Of a stretch of 64,000 nucleotides of DNA, positions 1-62,213 are shown piece after piece. Position 1 is the stretch's first letter; each line of letters opens with the position of its first letter. Location of the stretch: the sequence record NC_048674.1, one strand, 5' to 3'. Position numbers and translations under genes: made by a program. The notes under the pieces were generated by a model that saw only the letters and a program-made list of their open reading frames with translations, did not search any database and was not told where the DNA came from.

Positions 1-655
1 GAAATCGTCCATCATCTGAGTAACAAGGGAGGTTGTTGGAACGATTAGCAATATTTTCCCATCATAATTAGTCATATACCAGTAACAAATAAGAGCTGCT
101 ATTAGGGATTTACCGGCAGACGTAGGAAGGTTTAAGATACCCCGGTTATTCTGAATTGCGTAATAAACCGCATCAGCCTGATACCAGTGCGCGGTAATCT
201 TATTTCCCCCAGAATATATATCAATATCAGCCAACCATTTATCAAACTCTTCTCTAGATGTGAAATGGTTAATAGGAGTAAAGTCTTCTTCTTTTTCAAA
301 TTCGTATTCGTTTCTANGCCAGCCATAATACCATGAGAAAATTCCCGTCTCATAAACTGGTAATCCGCGAAATCGTCCATCATCTGAGTAACAAGGGAGG
401 TTGTTGGAACGNNNNNNNNNNNNNNNNNNNNNNNNNNNNNNNNNNNNNNGCGCAATATTTCTCAAGGTTATTGACCAGACCATAAGGGAATTTTCCATCA
501 GGTTGTAGGAGACGGATCCGACCATCCCAACCGCTATATTTAANNNNACCACCTTCCGTCTCAAATGAATAATACTCTCTCAACTCCATGAAGATGTCAC
601 GTTCACACTCGATAATTGCATTACTATAGTCGTTGAATTTAACTGATACTTTCAT
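1..655 (-). CDS. uvsW: UvsW DNA helicase, 5' part (fragmented by assembly gaps, runs off window start)
   Basis: N-terminus MKVSVKFNDYSNAIIECERDIFMELREYYSF...WDGRIRLL matches T4 UvsW. Positions ~1-295 read WYQADAV...NLPTSAGKSLI (Walker A)...IVPTTSLVTQMMDDF. Positions ~295-411 are a misplaced downstream piece next to an N gap. Confidence 0.88.
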
Positions 656-689
656 CTCGTTCTCTCTTTAAATTTTTCACATATATAAT

Positions 690-710
690 TATTTAGGGCA
701 ACACTAAATA
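690..710. promoter_or_regulatory. Divergent pair of late promoters (CTAAATA): minus strand for uvsW, plus strand for ORF 756
   Basis: TATTTAG at 690-696 and CTAAATA at 704-710, between divergent genes. The same motif precedes the spanins and tail fibre. Confidence 0.65.
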
Positions 711-755
711 AATGCGAGGGAATACCATTTCCTCGTGACGTAGGGAGAAAATAAA

Positions 756-1118
756 ATGCTTATAAATAGTAAGCTGTTTAAAGACACCCTACCCGTCCTA
801 ACCGTTATTGTGGCGATCTGGGCCTCTATATTTTCATATAATGAATTTATAGCGGATTCCCGCCAAGTAGCTTTTAAAGAGCAAATCACTTCCCACATGG
901 ACAAATCTATAGATAACCTAAGAACGGAGATTAAATCTCTCCCAAATAAGGATTCTGTAGAAACTGCTCAACTGCGGGCAATGCTTTATAGTAAGGATCT
1001 TATCGATGAGGTTAATAGGGGGAACCGAGTTGAATTGGAGAGACTTGAGAAGCGGATCAGTGAGATGGAAAACGCCAGAGTTGAGAAGAAAACTCAAACA
1101 AAACGCGAGGACGGTTAA
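756..1118 (+). CDS. Late-expressed protein with one N-terminal TM helix and a coiled coil
   Basis: Hydrophobic LPVLTVIVAIWASIFSY segment, heptad-rich C-terminus, upstream CTAAATA, downstream terminator. Confidence 0.7.
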   Translation: MLINSKLFKDTLPVLTVIVAIWASIFSYNEFIADSRQVAFKEQITSHMDKSIDNLRTEIKSLPNKDSVETAQLRAMLYSKDLIDEVNRGNRVELERLEKRISEMENARVEKKTQTKREDG

Positions 1119-1131
1119 GTTGTCTAACGTG

Positions 1132-1163
1132 GGTCATGATGCAATTTGCTCATGGCCTTTTTT
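1132..1163 (+). terminator. Intrinsic terminator
   Basis: Stem ggtcatgatgc/gctcatggcc followed by T6. Confidence 0.7.
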
Positions 1164-1177
1164 CTTTTAAAAAGGGG

Positions 1178-1207
1178 TTGACTCATGAAACTTGTGTGTA
1201 GTATTAT
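1178..1207 (+). promoter_or_regulatory. Early sigma70-type promoter
   Basis: TTGACT then TATTAT (18-nt spacer), followed by a GAGG RBS. Confidence 0.7.
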
Positions 1208-1239
1208 CTATCTCGTTGAGACACAAAAGAGGAATTACA

Positions 1240-1722
1240 ATGCTGAATGATCCTTACGAGTTGTTTTTTGATATGGATGGGGTGATGGCTGACTGGTGTC
1301 GTGCATTCGATGCTCGTTTTGGTGAGGGTGCGGCAGAACAGTTTGACAGTCTGAACAAAGAAGATAAGAATCTTATCAAAGAAGAACTGGCAAATGGTAA
1401 TTTCTATCGTCATCTTCCGGTGATGGAAAAAGGGGTTTCTCTGGTTATTGAGATGGTTCGTAGTGGTCGCAAGGTAAGTATCTTAACCAGCGTCGGTCGT
1501 CAAAACCCAGAGAACGTAGTTCGCCAGAAGAAAGCTTGGGTCTCTTATGTATATCCTGCTGACGTCGCTGCGGTACTGTTAGAAAACTTCCATTATACCC
1601 TGTGTAGTGAAGACAAAGCCGCGTTTGCTCGTCCTAACGTTTGTCTGGTTGATGACCGTGCCAAGAGCCGCATCCCGTTCATCGCTGCTGGTGGTGTTGC
1701 TGTTGATATCGCTGACCTTTAA
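1240..1722 (+). CDS. HAD-superfamily phosphatase, 5'(3')-deoxyribonucleotidase (NT5C)-like
   Basis: Motif I FDMDGVMAD, motif II ILTS, motif III K (EDKAAFA), motif IV LVDDR. Start chosen after the RBS. Confidence 0.8.
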   Translation: MLNDPYELFFDMDGVMADWCRAFDARFGEGAAEQFDSLNKEDKNLIKEELANGNFYRHLPVMEKGVSLVIEMVRSGRKVSILTSVGRQNPENVVRQKKAWVSYVYPADVAAVLLENFHYTLCSEDKAAFARPNVCLVDDRAKSRIPFIAAGGVAVDIADL

Positions 1723-1734
1723 GAGGAATTAATT

Positions 1735-2070
1735 ATGTTGGTAGAAAGTTTGTCTGTTGGTGTTGTTTGTCTTGGTCTGGCATATGGTCTTGACAAGTTT
1801 TTAGGAACTGGTATATTTTCTTGGAAAGAGAAAACCCCATCAAAACTGATGCGATCTAACGCAGATCAAGATTCAGTAATGAGGAACCAACACCACCAAA
1901 AAGGTATGATCGCCAAAAATGTGTTTGGTAAATTTTATGGTGGAAAACACAAAGCTAGGGTAAGTTATACCGAGAAAGAAATTTGTGTCCCTCACCCGGT
2001 AATTGTTAACTTTATTAACAACCTTTATAAAGAAAGGAAACAAAAATGTGTAACGAAGAATTGCAAGTAA
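1735..2070 (+). CDS. Hypothetical protein with N-terminal hydrophobic helix
   Basis: RBS gaggaa, in operon, typical codon usage. Confidence 0.6.
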   Translation: MLVESLSVGVVCLGLAYGLDKFLGTGIFSWKEKTPSKLMRSNADQDSVMRNQHHQKGMIAKNVFGKFYGGKHKARVSYTEKEICVPHPVIVNFINNLYKERKQKCVTKNCK

Positions 2071-2369
2071 AATACCCAAACATTTATTTTTCGAAGTACT
2101 GCACAGGGTCTTATTGGCGAAAAGGGGTTGGTGGTCGAGATGCAGAAGCACTCCCACGAAACAAACCACTTGAGTTCCTTAACGAACAGTGTGGTTTGGT
2201 AAATGTAGGTGTTCGATATTTTGTATGTACTTGTTGTGGTACTGCACAAGACGAAGACCAACTTGTTGGTAATGTGTTTGCTGGGAAATATTGCAAAACC
2301 TGCTATGACAAAGAGCCACAAATTCGCAAATCTATTGCTGAAAGCAAAAAACCCGGTTTTTACGACTAA
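2046..2369 (+). CDS. Hypothetical Zn-finger protein
   Basis: CTCC...CKTC cysteine pairs. Confidence 0.6.
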   Translation: MCNEELQVKYPNIYFSKYCTGSYWRKGVGGRDAEALPRNKPLEFLNEQCGLVNVGVRYFVCTCCGTAQDEDQLVGNVFAGKYCKTCYDKEPQIRKSIAESKKPGFYD

Positions 2370-2384
2370 ATAAAAGGAAATAAT

Positions 2385-3386
2385 ATGATTTTTGTAAAAT
2401 ATAACTCTCTTGAGAACCACTATCGTCAAAACGTCATCGACTCTTTTGCAACTTCCGGATATACTGCAAAGGGTGTTGAATGGGTTGCAATGGAAAAGAT
2501 TCATGGTACTAATTTTCAACTTGCTGTAAATGATGAACATGTACAGGCTGGTCGTCGAACTGATCTTCTTGGTGATTTTGACCAGTTTTATGAAGCAGAC
2601 CTGATTGTAAAGAAATATCATGATAATGCCCGAAAAGTATACAACTTTGTTAAACAAAAACACCCAGAAGTTGATCAAGTTACAATCTTCGGGGAATATG
2701 CCGGTAATCTTACTACTGGAAAAATGATTCAAAAAGAAGTAGAGTATGGAGATCAAGACTTTTATGTGTTTGATATCTTCATTTTCTCTGGTGAAACTGG
2801 AATGTACCTCTCCCACGATTTCGTTATGGATGCAATCGATGGGATCTTCAAACATGCCCCTGTTATCTACCGTGGGGATTTCGATGGTGTAACAAAACTC
2901 CCGAACGACTTCCAATCAGTTGTTATCCCAAGCAACAAAGCAGGAAAATTCGATCTTGTTGAAGGAACTGATAACATTGCGGAGGGGTTTGTTGCGAAGA
3001 CAGTAGACCCACATTATACCCGTCAAGGTCGGACTATTTTCAAATCTAAAAACTCCAAGTTTACAGAGAAAGGGAAATCTGACAAACCGGTAAAGGTAAA
3101 AGAGCCTCTGGGTGAATCAGATCTTGCTATGGTTCATGAGATTGCTGAATATATCAACGTGAATCGTCTTAAAAATGTCCTCAGTAAGATTGGGATCCCT
3201 ACCACCAAAGAGTTTGGTAAGGTTTCTGGTAACCTCTCGAAAGACGCAATTGAAGATTTCACGAAGGATACCAGCAAAAATCTACGAGATGCAGAACGTC
3301 CTTCTGATGTAGGTAAAGCAGTGAACAACCTAGCAGGGGAACTTGTTCGGGAACACTGGATGAATATCCTTGATGGAAATTTCTAA
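2385..3386 (+). CDS. rnlB: RNA ligase 2
   Basis: KYNSLENHY N-terminus, motif I EKIHGTNF, IFGEYAG, FYVFDI, EGFVAK, FKSKNSKFTEK, all matching T4 Rnl2. Confidence 0.95.
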   Translation: MIFVKYNSLENHYRQNVIDSFATSGYTAKGVEWVAMEKIHGTNFQLAVNDEHVQAGRRTDLLGDFDQFYEADLIVKKYHDNARKVYNFVKQKHPEVDQVTIFGEYAGNLTTGKMIQKEVEYGDQDFYVFDIFIFSGETGMYLSHDFVMDAIDGIFKHAPVIYRGDFDGVTKLPNDFQSVVIPSNKAGKFDLVEGTDNIAEGFVAKTVDPHYTRQGRTIFKSKNSKFTEKGKSDKPVKVKEPLGESDLAMVHEIAEYINVNRLKNVLSKIGIPTTKEFGKVSGNLSKDAIEDFTKDTSKNLRDAERPSDVGKAVNNLAGELVREHWMNILDGNF

Positions 3387-3434
3387 AAATAAATGAAAAA
3401 ANATATCGAAACAAGAGACAAAAAGGAACGAACC

Positions 3435-4070
3435 ATGAACAACGAAAAATTCAATGAAATTATGGAAAACGTAGTTGGTATGGTTGAAGCCGGTTTTGTT
3501 TCTAAGGCCGGTCAGAAACGCGCCCTAAACGAATGCGCAAAAATGATGGAACTGGTGCGGGCCGAATTCTCTTCTTTCTATCTGGACTCCATCAACATCG
3601 AACAGCGTAATATGAATCTTCCGGAACACGAAGCAGCGGTAGACCTTTATTATGCACAACCAAACACCGCGACTTTCGCCAAATATCTGGTAAAAGCAGA
3701 AAAAGCAATGCCTTGGATGGATAAAGCTCTGTGTGAAGAATTGGTTTCTATGGGTGAACAGGTTGTTGCTATGATTGAAACAGTTAAAAACGCTCCAATC
3801 AACCAACCAGAACCGAAAGTTAGCGAGAAAGAAGCCGTTATAAAGAAAAACATCATGGAGATCATGGAACTTCGGGGTGAACAGTTCAACCGGTGTCTTC
3901 GTTTGGATGAGATGTTTGGTCGGATGATGGTAACCGCTAACGTTCACCTTGTTCGTGGACACAAAGGTACTGTGTTTGTTCGCGCCTTCTACTACGTTTG
4001 TGGACACCTGACCCCCCTGAATGTAATCATTGCTGCTATGGAAGAAGCAGCAAAAAAAGAAACCAAATAA
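3435..4070 (+). CDS. Hypothetical early protein
   Basis: Long ORF with highly expressed codon usage and aggaa RBS. Confidence 0.7.
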   Translation: MNNEKFNEIMENVVGMVEAGFVSKAGQKRALNECAKMMELVRAEFSSFYLDSINIEQRNMNLPEHEAAVDLYYAQPNTATFAKYLVKAEKAMPWMDKALCEELVSMGEQVVAMIETVKNAPINQPEPKVSEKEAVIKKNIMEIMELRGEQFNRCLRLDEMFGRMMVTANVHLVRGHKGTVFVRAFYYVCGHLTPLNVIIAAMEEAAKKETK

Positions 4071-4091
4071 CTTTAAATTGAGGAATGAAAA

Positions 4092-4811
4092 ATGAAAAAG
4101 CGGTTTGTTAGTTTTGCTATCTTAGGTGCTATGTGTGCTATTAGTGCGGTACAGGTTAATGCGGCATCTTTTGACTGTGAGAAAGCATCGAGTAAAATAG
4201 AACGAACTATTTGTGCAGACGAACGGCTGAGTGAATCAGATGAGAAACTGAATTCTGTTTATAAAGAAGTTCGAAAAATTAACCCAGCGATCATAGAAGG
4301 TCAGCGAGATTGGGTCAAACGTCGTAATAAAGCATCTTCAATCGAAGAACTCGACCAACTTCATGAAACTCGGATCCAAGAACTTGAATCCATGCTTAAA
4401 CCAATCATCGAACAAGATGATGAAAGTGTGTTCACTCGTTCCGAACAACCAAAAATCAAGAAAGTGTCTGTTGTTGAAAATAAAAACGTAGTGAAAGACA
4501 TTAAATATTATGTCGATGAAGTACAACGTACTGGTGGAATGACTAATAAGGATGGATTCTTTTCCGCAAAAGAAGTGGGTAAGGGTTATCCTAGTTGGTT
4601 AAAAGGTTGTGGGATGGTTGTGGGTGAAGCACACGGTACAAAATATTTCATCAACGATGCCAAGAAATATGGTCAATTTGATATCTATATCCAGAATGAA
4701 TTGAGCTTTAAAACTGTTGCGGCTAATATCATGATTAAAAATATGGTAGATTCCGTAAAAGGCGATCTAGGTCTTGTTAAAATTATGTGTGATTCCGGAG
4801 AATTATATTAA
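4092..4811 (+). CDS. Secreted protein with LprI (DUF1311) lysozyme-inhibitor-like N-terminal domain
   Basis: Signal peptide followed by AASFDCEKASSKIERTICADERLSESDEKLNSVY...QRDWVKRRN...RIQEL, the typical LprI signature. Confidence 0.75.
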   Translation: MKKRFVSFAILGAMCAISAVQVNAASFDCEKASSKIERTICADERLSESDEKLNSVYKEVRKINPAIIEGQRDWVKRRNKASSIEELDQLHETRIQELESMLKPIIEQDDESVFTRSEQPKIKKVSVVENKNVVKDIKYYVDEVQRTGGMTNKDGFFSAKEVGKGYPSWLKGCGMVVGEAHGTKYFINDAKKYGQFDIYIQNELSFKTVAANIMIKNMVDSVKGDLGLVKIMCDSGELY

Positions 4812-5077
4812 TGAACCCCAAAGCTCGTGAATTGATGATAGAGCTATTCAATAACGGGATCGAGTGTAGGTTGGTATCTTCATCCACAAGCTCTTATATC
4901 GACGTACAGGGGCATATGGTGAGGGTTTCAGACCACGGAGGTCATTCTAAGTTCAAAGGAACTCAGATCCGAAAAGACCATGGCTATAAAAAGACCAAAT
5001 ATGGTATGATCTTTGGGTATAACGAGATTGGGATGGCAGTAAAATATCTCAAATCCCTAAATACATTAACAAACTAA
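4811..5077 (+). CDS. Hypothetical protein (RVSDH motif)
   Basis: Translationally coupled ORF. Confidence 0.6.
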   Translation: MNPKARELMIELFNNGIECRLVSSSTSSYIDVQGHMVRVSDHGGHSKFKGTQIRKDHGYKKTKYGMIFGYNEIGMAVKYLKSLNTLTN

Positions 5078-5089
5078 GAGGAATGCGAA

Positions 5090-5887
5090 ATGGCATTGAA
5101 TTATGTAGAAGAACCAGTAGAAAAAGAAACTAAACCAAAAAAGTCTACTGCGAAAAAACAAAAAGAGCTTGACCTTGGGGTAATCAACGAAATTGTTGAT
5201 GCTAATACCGCACCAGAAGCGAAAGCGAAAATTCAAGCATATGCTAAGGAATGTGGTTTTAAAATTAGCAAGTCTAATACTTCGGTTGACGATATGATCG
5301 TTAAACTCCTTGAAATGGCGGACGCCAAAGAGAATGAAAAACTGGACCTTGCACCGGAACCGAAAGAAAAAACCCCTTTTGTCGAACCAGTTGTAGTCGA
5401 TGATGAATTCGACAATGTAGAAGAGGTTATTGAACTTGGTGTGGTTGAATCAATCAAAATTGATGATGGGGTGGTTAATATCAATACTCCTAACGATGTT
5501 AAAATTGAATTCACTCCACCGAAACAACCAGAATATATTGATGCTTCTGGGTTTAAAACTCTCGACGAATTAATTGAAGATGAAAAGAAGTTCGTTAAAG
5601 AAAAAATGAATTTGGAAACTACTAAAGATACCCAAGAACCGGATTTGACTTATGGTTTCAAGCCGAAAGTAAATCTGATTGGTGCTGTTGGTAACCAATA
5701 CCTCAATTGCCCGTATTGGATTCTTGATTGGATCCTTGATAAAGGACCGTCTTGGAAGAGTATTATTGATACTCATGAACGCGAACCGGATAAAGCACTT
5801 CTGAAAACAGTTCTTTATTACATCCAGATTAATGGTAGTGTGACATTGCGCGAGAGTCGTAATTCTCGGTTCCATACCATTTATTAA
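5090..5887 (+). CDS. inh: Inhibitor of prohead protease (Inh)
   Basis: Acidic N-terminal and middle region. C-terminus FKPKVNLIG...YLNCPYWILDWI...VLYYIQINGSVTLRESRNSRF resembles T4 Inh. Lies near uvsW and rnlB as in T4. Confidence 0.8.
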   Translation: MALNYVEEPVEKETKPKKSTAKKQKELDLGVINEIVDANTAPEAKAKIQAYAKECGFKISKSNTSVDDMIVKLLEMADAKENEKLDLAPEPKEKTPFVEPVVVDDEFDNVEEVIELGVVESIKIDDGVVNINTPNDVKIEFTPPKQPEYIDASGFKTLDELIEDEKKFVKEKMNLETTKDTQEPDLTYGFKPKVNLIGAVGNQYLNCPYWILDWILDKGPSWKSIIDTHEREPDKALLKTVLYYIQINGSVTLRESRNSRFHTIY

Positions 5888-5892
5888 TATCT

Positions 5893-5930
5893 AGCCATCC
5901 TATGGGGTGGCTTTTTTGTATCCCTAAATA
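5893..5930 (+). terminator. Terminator after inh, followed by late promoter CTAAATA (5924-5930)
   Basis: agccatcc-tatg-gggtggct then T run, then ccctaaata. Confidence 0.7.
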
Positions 5931-5968
5931 CCAATTGACCATTTTGGTCAATATAAGAAGGGTGTTTA

Positions 5969-6190
5969 ATGGAATACAATTTCATCGAAGTTAATGAAAA
6001 TATTTTTGTTCTTACTGGATATTTCGGATCTTATAATTTGATTGAGAGATGGAAAAGACTTGAAGAAGATGACCATTTAATGATCGTGAAGATAAAGGAA
6101 TATTTGGGGAAGGGGAATATTGTGGTTGTACATGATGTACAAGAAGATTTATTCGTTAAGCTAGATGGAGATAAATTTTACGTTTTTTGA
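5969..6190 (+). CDS. Hypothetical protein
   Basis: ORF downstream of CTAAATA, followed by hairpins and a terminator at 6237-6261. Confidence 0.55.
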   Translation: MEYNFIEVNENIFVLTGYFGSYNLIERWKRLEEDDHLMIVKIKEYLGKGNIVVVHDVQEDLFVKLDGDKFYVF

Positions 6191-6316
6191 TTTCGTATTG
6201 TATCAGACATTACGAATGTTTTTAACTTTTATACTTAGGTGGTCGAGAGATCACCTTTTTTGTATCTTTTATATACAAAATAAAATAGTTTCACTTGTAA
6301 TCAAAGTATAAAATCT

Positions 6317-6390
6317 CTATAAGTATTTATATAGAAGATCTATAATTAGAGAGCGAAGCGAACCGCCGAAGGCGTACTCACTACGTTCGT
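6317..6390. repeat. Copy 1 of 34-bp AT-rich box plus mini-hairpin cluster
   Basis: ctataagtatttatatagaagatctataattaga (6317-6350) is identical to 48238-48271. It is followed by gagcgaagcgaaccgccgaaggcgtactcactacgttcgt. Confidence 0.9.
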
Positions 6391-61712: not shown

Positions 61713-62213
61713 ATGTTAGAAAAAATGCTTAAATTCGACGAGGGTTCGAAGCTTACTGTTTATTGGGATACCGAAGGATATCCGACTATCGGTATTGGTC
61801 ATTTAATAAAGAAACTTCGTACGAAAGATATGGGGGAAATTAACCGTGAGTTAAGTTCCCATGTTGGGAGGGTTATTACCGACGGTAAGATTACTCAATC
61901 AGAAGAAAGTCAACTTTTTGCTAAAGATCTTGAAGTAGTTAGAAATTCTATGAAAGGGTATGTCGATTTATGGTCTACATATGTTGGATTAGATGAAGTC
62001 AGAAAAACCGCATTGGAAAATATGGTTTTTCAGATGGGGGCCAAAGGTGTAAATGGCTTCCCGTCGATGCTTCGCGCTATGCGCTCCAAGAACTGGGTAG
62101 AAGCAAAGAAGCACGGTCTTGCTAGTGCTTGGGCGAGACAGACACCAAATCGTGCTAAGAGAGTTACAGACGTTATTGAGACTGGTACTTACAAAGGTTA
62201 TCCATTCGCATAA
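61713..62213 (+). CDS. e: T4-type lysozyme (endolysin)
   Basis: DEG...YWDTEGYPTIGIGHL (E/D/T triad), NMVFQMG, WARQTPNRAKRV. Confidence 0.95.
   Translation: MLEKMLKFDEGSKLTVYWDTEGYPTIGIGHLIKKLRTKDMGEINRELSSHVGRVITDGKITQSEESQLFAKDLEVVRNSMKGYVDLWSTYVGLDEVRKTALENMVFQMGAKGVNGFPSMLRAMRSKNWVEAKKHGLASAWARQTPNRAKRVTDVIETGTYKGYPFA

What the first reader, a model, noticed from the sequence alone, without database searches (positions are those of the whole stretch)
4092..4811. Phage-encoded secreted LprI-like lysozyme inhibitor, a possible Spackle analogue
Seen: a signal peptide, an LprI/DUF1311 signature (first Cys pair kept, second pair apparently lost) and an unrelated ~100-aa C-terminal domain, in an early operon. 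Known: LprI is a bacterial lysozyme inhibitor, and T4 Spackle is a periplasmic inhibitor of the gp5 tail lysozyme that gives superinfection exclusion. Inference: a captured host-type inhibitor used for superinfection exclusion, resistance to lysis from without, or control of its own endolysin (61713).
Basis: partly seen in the sequence, partly recalled or inferred. Interest (0 to 1): 0.65.

Follow-up and report, generated by a model that had tools for sequence, protein, structure and literature searches.

The report
Exported two-domain LprI-like phage protein
A T4-like Aeromonas phage encodes a real exported protein that joins a known bacterial envelope module (DUF1311, the N-terminal part of LprI) to a phage-only domain of unknown fold. 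The idea that it blocks lysozymes as T4 Spackle does is plausible but rests mostly on the family's name.

Summary
Window 4092-4811 (+) of Aeromonas phage AS-sw encodes a 239-aa protein under purifying selection. It has four parts: a Sec signal peptide, a DUF1311/LprI-N domain (Pfam 30 bits against a cut-off of 22), a disordered linker, and a 108-aa helical C-domain with its own conserved Cys pair. The N-domain keeps only the first Cys pair.

The C-domain has almost no relatives in 1.84 billion representative proteins and no match to a solved structure.

- In M. tuberculosis LprI, lysozyme inhibition is attributed to the MliC domain, which this protein lacks.
- A Salmonella DUF1311 protein gave no lysozyme resistance.
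- Stand-alone DUF1311 proteins do serve as periplasmic immunity proteins against wall-cleaving T6SS effectors, so binding a peptidoglycan hydrolase remains the best guess (about 0.35).
- There is no detectable homology to Spackle (HHalign probability 0.15%).
- Marfaviruses carry both genes, so this is not a simple replacement for Spackle.
- I found no close host homologue, so recent capture is unsupported.

Co-folding could not be run. The protein belongs to PHROG 4675, a family found in several phage genera. Two earlier notes of this scan on other pieces of this genome reached the same reading.

The parts
4080..4084 (+). Shine-Dalgarno-like GAGGA, 7 nt before the ATG
   Evidence: read from the sequence
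4092..4811 (+). CDS of the 239-aa exported two-domain protein (P0001; ATI18059.1; PHROG 4675)
   Evidence: (phrog_4675 E 2e-83 over residues 7-232); purifying selection
4092..4163 (+). Sec signal peptide, residues 1-24, predicted signal peptidase I cut VNA|AS
   Evidence: n-region KKR, hydrophobic core, AxA motif conserved in homologues; pLDDT below 50 in the model
4164..4406 (+). DUF1311/LprI-N-type helical domain, residues 25-105, with Cys29 (4176-4178) and Cys41 (4212-4214); the second family Cys pair is absent
   Evidence: Pfam PF07007 30 bits against cut-off 22; structural matches 6ar7_A Z 9.3 and 3gi7_B (a DUF1311 protein) Z 6.4, rmsd 1.9 A over 62 residues; alignments
4407..4484 (+). 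Low-complexity, predicted disordered linker, residues 106-131
   Evidence: pLDDT below 50 for residues 105-131; variable length and sequence among homologues
4485..4808 (+). Phage-specific C-terminal domain, residues 132-239: helix, beta-hairpin, four helices. Conserved YP.WL..C with Cys173 (4608-4610) and Cys233 (4788-4790)
   Evidence: AlphaFold2 model pLDDT 89.4, pTM 0.82; no solved-structure match; 3 genuine relatives among 6 hits in 1.84e9 representatives, two more from the profile word search; occurs alone behind a signal peptide in P0010, P0013 and LAh10_103
4811..5077 (+). Downstream 88-aa ORF (phrog_17661, unknown function), start overlapping the stop (TAATG); no signal peptide
   Evidence: the same pairing occurs in phage 65
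5893..5912 (+). Terminator-like hairpin with T-run after inh; probable end of the transcription unit
1790..1817 (+). Best sigma-70-like promoter match upstream (TTGACA, 16 nt spacer, TATATT, with TG); a consensus match only
   Evidence: the number of such sites equals chance expectation
61713..62213 (+).
   Evidence: PF00959 38.6 bits; ORF

Best explanation
The gene encodes a soluble periplasmic accessory protein of the infected cell. It is exported by Sec, cut after VNA, and carries one disulfide in each of its two domains. The N-terminal module is a DUF1311/LprI-N helical domain. A flexible linker joins it to a phage-only helical domain.

The most likely function is that the protein binds a peptidoglycan-cleaving glycosidase (lysozyme or lytic-transglycosylase type) in the periplasm and so shields the wall of the infected cell. 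Stand-alone DUF1311 proteins do this as immunity proteins against wall-targeting T6SS effectors. The enzyme kept in check could be the tail lysozyme of a superinfecting phage, a neighbour's T6SS muramidase, or the phage's own or a host enzyme.

Shown here: the gene, its export signals, domain membership, conserved Cys pairs, purifying selection and family distribution. Inferred: that it binds an enzyme at all, which enzyme, and the benefit to the phage.
For: Export and domains.

DUF1311 fold.

Literature:
- Etsi4, a DUF1311 protein, rescues E. coli from the periplasmic toxicity of the wall-targeting effector Etse4 (PMC12981562).
- The Salmonella Dublin pair SED_RS06235/06230 is a transglycosylase-LysM effector with a 146-aa signal-peptide LprI-domain protein (PMC8867033).
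- Pantoea orphan LprI-domain immunity genes have homologues located next to lysozyme-like effectors in other Pantoea strains (PMC9796082; PMC12135965).

In Marfavirus, Biquartavirus and GomatiRiver_11 the family lies between primase (61) and dCTPase (56), and in Krischvirus after gene 52. By the T4 map as I know it, these are early-type clusters, and the first is the region that holds sp in T4.

The gene is dispensable in kind: it is split in phage 65 and in AsSzw2, as expected of an accessory function.

The phage has two T4-type lysozyme domains, e and gp5.
Against: - No binding or inhibition was tested; co-folding was unavailable.
- No MliC domain. PMC7933661 reports that the DUF1311 protein ScwA gives no lysozyme resistance and says the Pfam label lacks experimental support.
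- The phage clade has lost the second Cys pair and matches only two thirds of the HMM.
- No effector gene lies next to it.
- In bacteria DUF1311 often sits right after the signal peptide in front of varied domains (P0016-P0019). It may therefore be a generic module, with the function in the unknown C-domain.
- dN/dS gives no sign of an arms race.
Confidence: 0.35

Rival explanations
1. The protein is a functional analogue of T4 Spackle: an early periplasmic inhibitor of the gp5 tail lysozyme that gives superinfection exclusion and resistance to lysis from without.
For: - Like Spackle, each domain is a small periplasmic, mostly helical unit with one disulfide.
- AS-sw gp5 carries a lysozyme domain.
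- AS-sw, RB49, JK32, phage 65, GomatiRiver_11, UP87 and LAh10 have this family and no Spackle. Seven Spackle-bearing phages lack the family.
- In several genera the gene lies in the 61-56 region, where T4 keeps sp.
Against: - No homology to Spackle: HHalign probability 0.15% for the N-domain and 0.12% for the C-domain. No Spackle structure appears among the fold matches.
- Three Marfaviruses carry both genes.
- The complementary distribution follows taxonomy, so it represents few independent events, and the genomes were picked for having one gene or the other.
- Binding is untested.
Confidence: 0.15
2. The DUF1311 part is a generic periplasmic scaffold or pairing module. The phage-only C-domain carries a function unrelated to lysozymes, for example masking or binding an envelope component such as a receptor or porin, or interfering with a host envelope system.
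For: - The same N-module is joined to different C-domains in phages: phrog_4675 helical, phrog_14799 beta-rich in RB49.
- The same holds in bacteria: MliC in P0017, PF11738 in P0018, others.
- The C-domain also exists alone behind a signal peptide (P0010, P0013, LAh10_103).
- 16 of the 21 variable residues lie in the C-domain.
- The C-domain has no known fold.
Against: - No positive evidence for any particular target.
- In phage 65 and AsSzw2 the N-domain survives as an ORF of its own, which suggests it has value by itself.
Confidence: 0.25
3. A ScwA-like modulator of host or phage cell-wall enzymes. It would adjust the levels or activity of lytic transglycosylases or of the lysis machinery, so affecting lysis timing rather than protection from outside attack.
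For: Salmonella ScwA, a free periplasmic DUF1311 protein with disulfides, raises MltD levels, and its overproduction causes lysis (PMC7933661). In RB49 the family lies a few kb from the holin gene t.
Against: ScwA has a different architecture (its DUF1311 domain is C-terminal, residues 185-271). In AS-sw there is no link to lysis genes: the endolysin lies 57 kb away.
Confidence: 0.15
4. Not a functional gene: a chance ORF or a decaying remnant.
For: It is split in phage 65 and in AsSzw2.
Against: dN/dS is 0.03-0.12 across six ceceduoviruses. It is full length in more than 20 phage records from several genera. Both domains give confident folds.
Confidence: 0.02

Closest known systems
Pfam PF07007 (LprI / DUF1311; InterPro 'LprI-like N-terminal domain'), e.g. 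PDB 3GI7 PP0307
   Same: N-terminal ASFDC..EK.IC..L..LD..L..Y...Q..W motif directly after the signal peptide. Score above the gathering cut-off. Helical fold. Periplasmic location.
   Different: Only HMM positions 1-72 of 106 match. The second Cys pair is lost in the whole phage clade. It is fused to a phage-only C-domain.
Mycobacterium tuberculosis LprI (Rv1541c)
   Same: Shares the DUF1311 N-terminal domain and export.
   Different: LprI is a lipoprotein and carries a C-terminal MliC domain (PF09864), to which lysozyme inhibition is attributed (PMC7933661). This protein has no lipobox and no MliC domain.
DUF1311 T6SS immunity proteins (EHEC Etsi4/Z0245; Salmonella Dublin SED_RS06230; Pantoea orphan immunity genes)
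   Same: Signal peptide plus DUF1311 domain acting in the periplasm. This is the best experimental precedent for a DUF1311 protein neutralising a wall-targeting enzyme.
   Different: Those are single-domain proteins of about 146 aa encoded next to their effector. This one is phage-borne, has two domains and has no effector neighbour. Sequence relatedness to them was not measured here.
T4 Spackle (gp61.3; PF25676, phrog_1586; PDB complex with gp5 lysozyme)
   Same: A phage-encoded small periplasmic helical protein with one disulfide. In some genera the gene occupies a similar genomic neighbourhood.
   Different: No sequence or profile homology, and no fold match listed. It co-occurs with Spackle in Marfavirus. 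Activity is untested.
Salmonella ScwA (SL1344_0490)
   Same: A free periplasmic, disulfide-bonded DUF1311 protein tied to peptidoglycan enzymes.
   Different: In ScwA the DUF1311 domain is C-terminal. It has a regulatory effect on MltD and gives no lysozyme resistance.
PHROG 4675 / 14799 / 33858 (function unknown)
   Same: This protein is a full-length member of phrog_4675 (E 2e-83). phrog_14799 (RB49ORF260c) shares the N-module.
   Different: phrog_14799 has a different, beta-rich C-domain.

Membership tests
Pfam PF07007 LprI/DUF1311 | HMM score above the curated gathering cut-off | tested here: met
   30 bits against 22, E 7.4e-7, but only HMM positions 1-72 of 106. Of the eight full-length two-domain homologues scanned, seven score 22.4-31.5 bits and GomatiRiver_11 gave no Pfam hit.
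Pfam PF07007 LprI/DUF1311 | Four conserved cysteines (two pairs) | tested here: not met
   Only C29 and C41 are present. The C...C after W.K.R, seen in bacterial members P0014-P0019, is replaced by RNKAxSxEEL in all phage members.
Pfam PF07007 LprI/DUF1311 | Helical fold like solved DUF1311 proteins | tested here: met
   3gi7_B Z 6.4, rmsd 1.9 A over 62 residues; 6ar7_A Z 9.3 over 73 residues. These Z values are in the range that helical bundles can reach by chance, so the evidence is supportive only.
MliC/PliC lysozyme inhibitors (PF09864) | MliC beta-barrel domain | tested here: not met
   No Pfam hit at E up to 1. The C-domain model is helical.
T4 Spackle (PF25676 / phrog_1586) | Sequence or profile homology to Spackle | tested here: not met
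   No phrog_1586 hit for P0001 at E up to 10. HHalign probability 0.15% (N-domain) and 0.12% (C-domain). Weak hits on Marfavirus relatives span only residues 1-75, and no mature-region similarity was found, so I read them as signal-peptide matches.
T4 Spackle (PF25676 / phrog_1586) | Binds and inhibits the gp5 lysozyme domain | not testable with these tools
T4 Spackle (PF25676 / phrog_1586) | Early expression | tested here: inconclusive
   Sigma-70-like sites lie upstream but at chance frequency, and there is no late-promoter motif nearby. No RNA run is on record.
DUF1311 T6SS immunity proteins | Encoded next to a cognate wall-targeting effector | tested here: not met
   The neighbours are rnlB, phrog_8776, phrog_17661 and inh.
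DUF1311 T6SS immunity proteins | Signal peptide plus DUF1311 domain in the periplasm | tested here: met
PHROG 4675 | Full-length profile match | tested here: met
   E 2.2e-83, residues 7-232 on profile positions 2-231 of 235

The most novel reading that the evidence does not exclude
PHROG 4675 is a second, Spackle-independent class of phage periplasmic wall-protection factors. A DUF1311 module derived from bacterial immunity proteins is coupled to a new-fold, disulfide-locked phage domain, and the protein inhibits tail or T6SS muramidases and so gives superinfection exclusion in T4-like phages that lack Spackle.
Probability: 0.15. Interest if true: 0.7.

Novelty: new variant of a known kind. 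Interest (0 to 1): 0.4.

Why it matters
Superinfection exclusion in T4-like phages outside the Tevenvirinae is poorly understood, and many of those phages have no Spackle. If this family inhibits wall-cleaving enzymes, three things would follow:
- It would be a second, independent solution to the problem Spackle solves.
- It would give the first biochemical role to a DUF1311 domain without MliC.
- It would link phage accessory genes to T6SS-type immunity.

The C-domain is also of interest on its own. It is confidently predicted, secreted and disulfide-bonded, it has no solved-structure counterpart, and it has almost no relatives outside phages.

If the protein does not bind such enzymes, the finding is mainly a caution against transferring the Pfam name 'lysozyme inhibitor LprI' to DUF1311-only proteins.

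Tried and rejected
- **Homology to Spackle: rejected.** The Spackle HMM gave weak hits (E 0.0015-0.007 per genome; 9-14 bits) on the Marfavirus relatives. HHalign of the mature N-domain and C-domain profiles against a mature Spackle profile gave probability 0.15% and 0.12%. The hits therefore most likely reflect the signal peptides.
- **MliC or another known inhibitor fold in the C-domain: rejected**.
- **Lipoprotein: rejected.** There is no lipobox, and Cys15 is not conserved.
- **True paralogue at 122 kb: rejected.** The second copy in the record (122120-122836, minus strand) is part of a 6.4-kb inverted duplicate of window 1-6389 and contains N's. Related genomes have one copy.
- **Recent capture from the host: not supported.** The pattern scan of 185,579 genomes found four distant matches (30-38% identity), none from Aeromonas. 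That scan is insensitive.
- **Positive selection on the C-domain: not seen.** dN/dS is 0.119 and dS is also raised, which looks more like recombination.
- **Sequence searches of the PDB with the protein, the N-domain and a phage N-domain profile** gave nothing.
- **ESM Atlas search:** no usable hit.
- **Complex prediction: no verdict.** I did not try again.
- **RNA evidence:** no run on record as RNA holds the stretch.

Full report
**Identity of the window.** The window is bases 1-64000 of Aeromonas phage AS-sw (MF498775.1, 'partial genome'; Straboviridae, Emmerichvirinae, Ceceduovirus). It is 100% identical over the region tested. The flagged ORF, 4092-4811 on the plus strand, is annotated there as a hypothetical protein (ATI18059.1).

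**The observation.**
- The ORF is 239 aa. A GAGGA lies 7 nt before the ATG.
- The N-terminus is a textbook Sec signal: KKR, a 17-residue hydrophobic core, then VNA|AS. Every homologue keeps the AxA|ASF(D/N)C junction.
- Cys15 in the signal is not in a lipobox and is not conserved, so this is a soluble periplasmic protein and not a lipoprotein.
- Pfam gives LprI (PF07007) at 30 bits against a gathering score of 22. The match covers residues 29-82 and HMM positions 1-72 of 106.
- Alignment with bacterial members recovered in the searches (P0014-P0019) shows what is missing. After the shared W.K.R the bacterial proteins have C...C, whereas all phage members have RNKAxS(V/I)EEL.
- Across six ceceduoviruses dN/dS is 0.034 for the N-domain and 0.119 for the C-domain. 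The ORF is a working gene.

**Structure.**
- With a nine-sequence alignment, AlphaFold2 gives two folded domains separated by a disordered linker (residues 105-131).
- The N-domain's best structural match is 6ar7_A (Z 9.3). The solved DUF1311 protein 3gi7_B comes at Z 6.4, rmsd 1.9 A over 62 residues. These values support the Pfam assignment but would not establish it alone.
- Folded alone, the C-domain is confident (pLDDT 89.4, pTM 0.82). It consists of a helix, a beta-hairpin and four helices.
- The C-domain has no counterpart among solved structures. Foldseek E-values are above 7, the best VIA-align Z is 4.1 with none at 5 or more among 48,161 representatives, and a second look found nothing.
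- In the viral model library the only credible matches are Aeromonas phage proteins.

**How rare the C-domain is.**
- A full HMMER pass over 1.84 billion representatives with the C-domain found six hits. Three are spurious repeats. The real ones are two-domain phage proteins (P0005, P0007) and P0010.
- P0010 is a 167-aa protein with a signal peptide and the C-domain only. It lies on a contig with a phage DNA polymerase and virion proteins.
- The profile word search added P0012 and P0013.
- LAh10 encodes a stand-alone secreted C-domain paralogue (LAh10_103) directly after its two-domain gene.
- The conserved core is YP.WL..C ... F ... N ... G ... C, with the pair Cys173/Cys233.
- Each domain thus has exactly one conserved Cys pair, which fits an oxidising periplasm.

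**The family.**
- The protein is a full-length member of PHROG 4675, function unknown.
- tblastn finds the N-module in 124 phage records. Full-length relatives occur in Aeromonas Ceceduovirus, Ishigurovirus (phage 65), Biquartavirus (UP87), GomatiRiver_11 and the jumbo Ludhianavirus (LAh10, D3). The Klebsiella Marfavirus proteins are shown to be full-length members by PHROG scans.
- Krischvirus (RB49ORF260c, phrog_14799) has the same N-module joined to a different, beta-rich C-domain with its own Cys pair.
- In phage 65 the two domains are separate ORFs at the syntenic site. In AsSzw2 the gene is broken at the start of the C-domain. The gene is therefore accessory, and the domains can be separated.

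**Genomic context.**
- In AS-sw and phage 65 the gene lies in a same-strand run: rnlB, phrog_8776, this gene, an 88-aa ORF whose start overlaps the stop (TAATG), then inh. A terminator-like hairpin follows at 5893-5912.
- The best sigma-70-like site upstream is at 1790-1817, but such sites occur at chance frequency. No T4-late-type TATAAATA lies nearby except at 761.
- In Marfavirus, Biquartavirus and GomatiRiver_11 the gene lies between primase 61 and dCTPase 56, and in Krischvirus after gene 52. From my knowledge of the T4 map these are early-type clusters, and the first is the region that holds sp in T4.
- 'Early' is therefore plausible but not shown. No RNA run was found.

**What the name LprI is worth.**
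- According to PMC7933661, M. tuberculosis LprI carries DUF1311 plus MliC. The paper says that MliC has been shown to be sufficient for lysozyme resistance and that the Pfam label for DUF1311 has 'no experimental evidence'. It also found that the periplasmic DUF1311 protein ScwA gives no lysozyme resistance and instead raises MltD levels.
- The MliC plus LprI architecture is visible in my own hits (P0017). The phage protein has no MliC domain.
- On the other hand, DUF1311-only proteins recur as T6SS immunity proteins against wall-targeting effectors. Etsi4 rescues the periplasmic toxicity of Etse4 (PMC12981562). SED_RS06230 is paired with a transglycosylase-LysM effector (PMC8867033). Pantoea orphan immunity genes have homologues next to lysozyme-like effectors in other strains (PMC9796082).
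- This precedent, and not LprI itself, is the best reason to think the N-module binds a peptidoglycan glycosidase.

**Spackle.**
- Spackle is a 75-aa mature helical bundle with one disulfide, and it selectively inhibits the gp5 lysozyme (PMC7677548).
- AS-sw has both an e-type endolysin (61713-62213) and a gp5 with a lysozyme domain.
- The Spackle HMM weakly touched the Marfavirus relatives. Profile-profile comparison of the mature parts gave 0.15% and 0.12% probability, so there is no detectable homology.
- In 17 genomes examined, three Marfaviruses have both genes, seven have Spackle only, and seven (including AS-sw) have this family only. Positive controls for the search worked.
- This pattern is largely complementary, but it follows taxonomy, and the genomes were chosen because they had one gene or the other. 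Co-occurrence in Marfavirus argues against simple redundancy.

**Origin.** A pattern scan of one genome for each of 185,579 species found only four distant bacterial matches (30-38% identity), none from Aeromonas. The phage clade shares derived features across genera that infect different hosts. This speaks against a recent capture from the host, although the scan is insensitive.

**What could not be done.** The job with the window's endolysin returned 'tool not available'.

**Verdict.** My best reading (0.35) is a periplasmic binder of a wall-cleaving enzyme that protects the infected cell. The strict Spackle-analogue reading is at 0.15, a C-domain-driven unrelated envelope function at 0.25, and a ScwA-like modulator at 0.15. 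Two earlier notes of this scan on other pieces of this genome (s1-412080, s1-161400) came to the same reading; they are not independent evidence.

Noticed in passing
window 1-6389 and MF498775.1 120531-126847: The first 6.4 kb of the record (and of the window) is a reverse-complement duplicate, about 99% identical, of the region at 120.5-126.8 kb. Both copies contain runs of N. Related ceceduoviruses have a single copy at the position between uvsW and gene 24. This is probably an assembly artefact of a draft 'partial genome', so the true downstream neighbourhood of the operon is the one at about 120 kb.
   Followed up: partly
window 6317-6390: The end of the duplicated block (6389) coincides with the repeated promoter-like box and hairpin element noted earlier in this scan (s1-157546). 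A dispersed repeat could have caused the misjoin.
   Followed up: no
window 132-655 (minus strand): uvsW is annotated as two small fragments here because of an N-run (412-449) and the record's start. The full gene is at 126310-127743 of the record.
   Followed up: partly
L008 (phage 65) 3953-4614; L037 (AsSzw2) 697-1395: The orthologue is split into an N-domain ORF and a C-domain ORF in phage 65. In AsSzw2 (an unverified record) it is interrupted by indels at the start of the C-domain. These are either real decay or sequencing errors.
   Followed up: partly
L009 (LAh10) 4703-5092: LAh10_103, directly downstream of the two-domain gene, is a 129-aa secreted stand-alone paralogue of the C-domain (phrog_4675 positions 139-227, E 2.7e-4; BFVD match A0A514A1Q4).
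   Followed up: partly
L013 (RB49) 3489-4247: RB49ORF260c (phrog_14799, all Krischvirus hits) has the same signal peptide and DUF1311 module but a beta-rich C-domain bounded by two cysteines. It has no Pfam match, MliC included. Its fold was not predicted.
   Followed up: no
window 4811-5077: An 88-aa basic ORF (phrog_17661) is translationally coupled to the gene (TAATG). The pairing is conserved in phage 65. It has no signal peptide and its function is unknown.
   Followed up: no
window 5090-5887: The inh-like gene (phrog_1051, inhibitor of prohead protease) is the last gene of the same-strand run. By the T4 precedent as I know it, this would be a late virion component, which sits oddly with a purely early operon.
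   Followed up: no
L028 (Aeromonas phage PS49, Karamvirus): At least one phage recorded on Aeromonas carries a genuine Spackle homologue (50% identical to the Marfa protein) and lacks the phrog_4675 family.
   Followed up: partly
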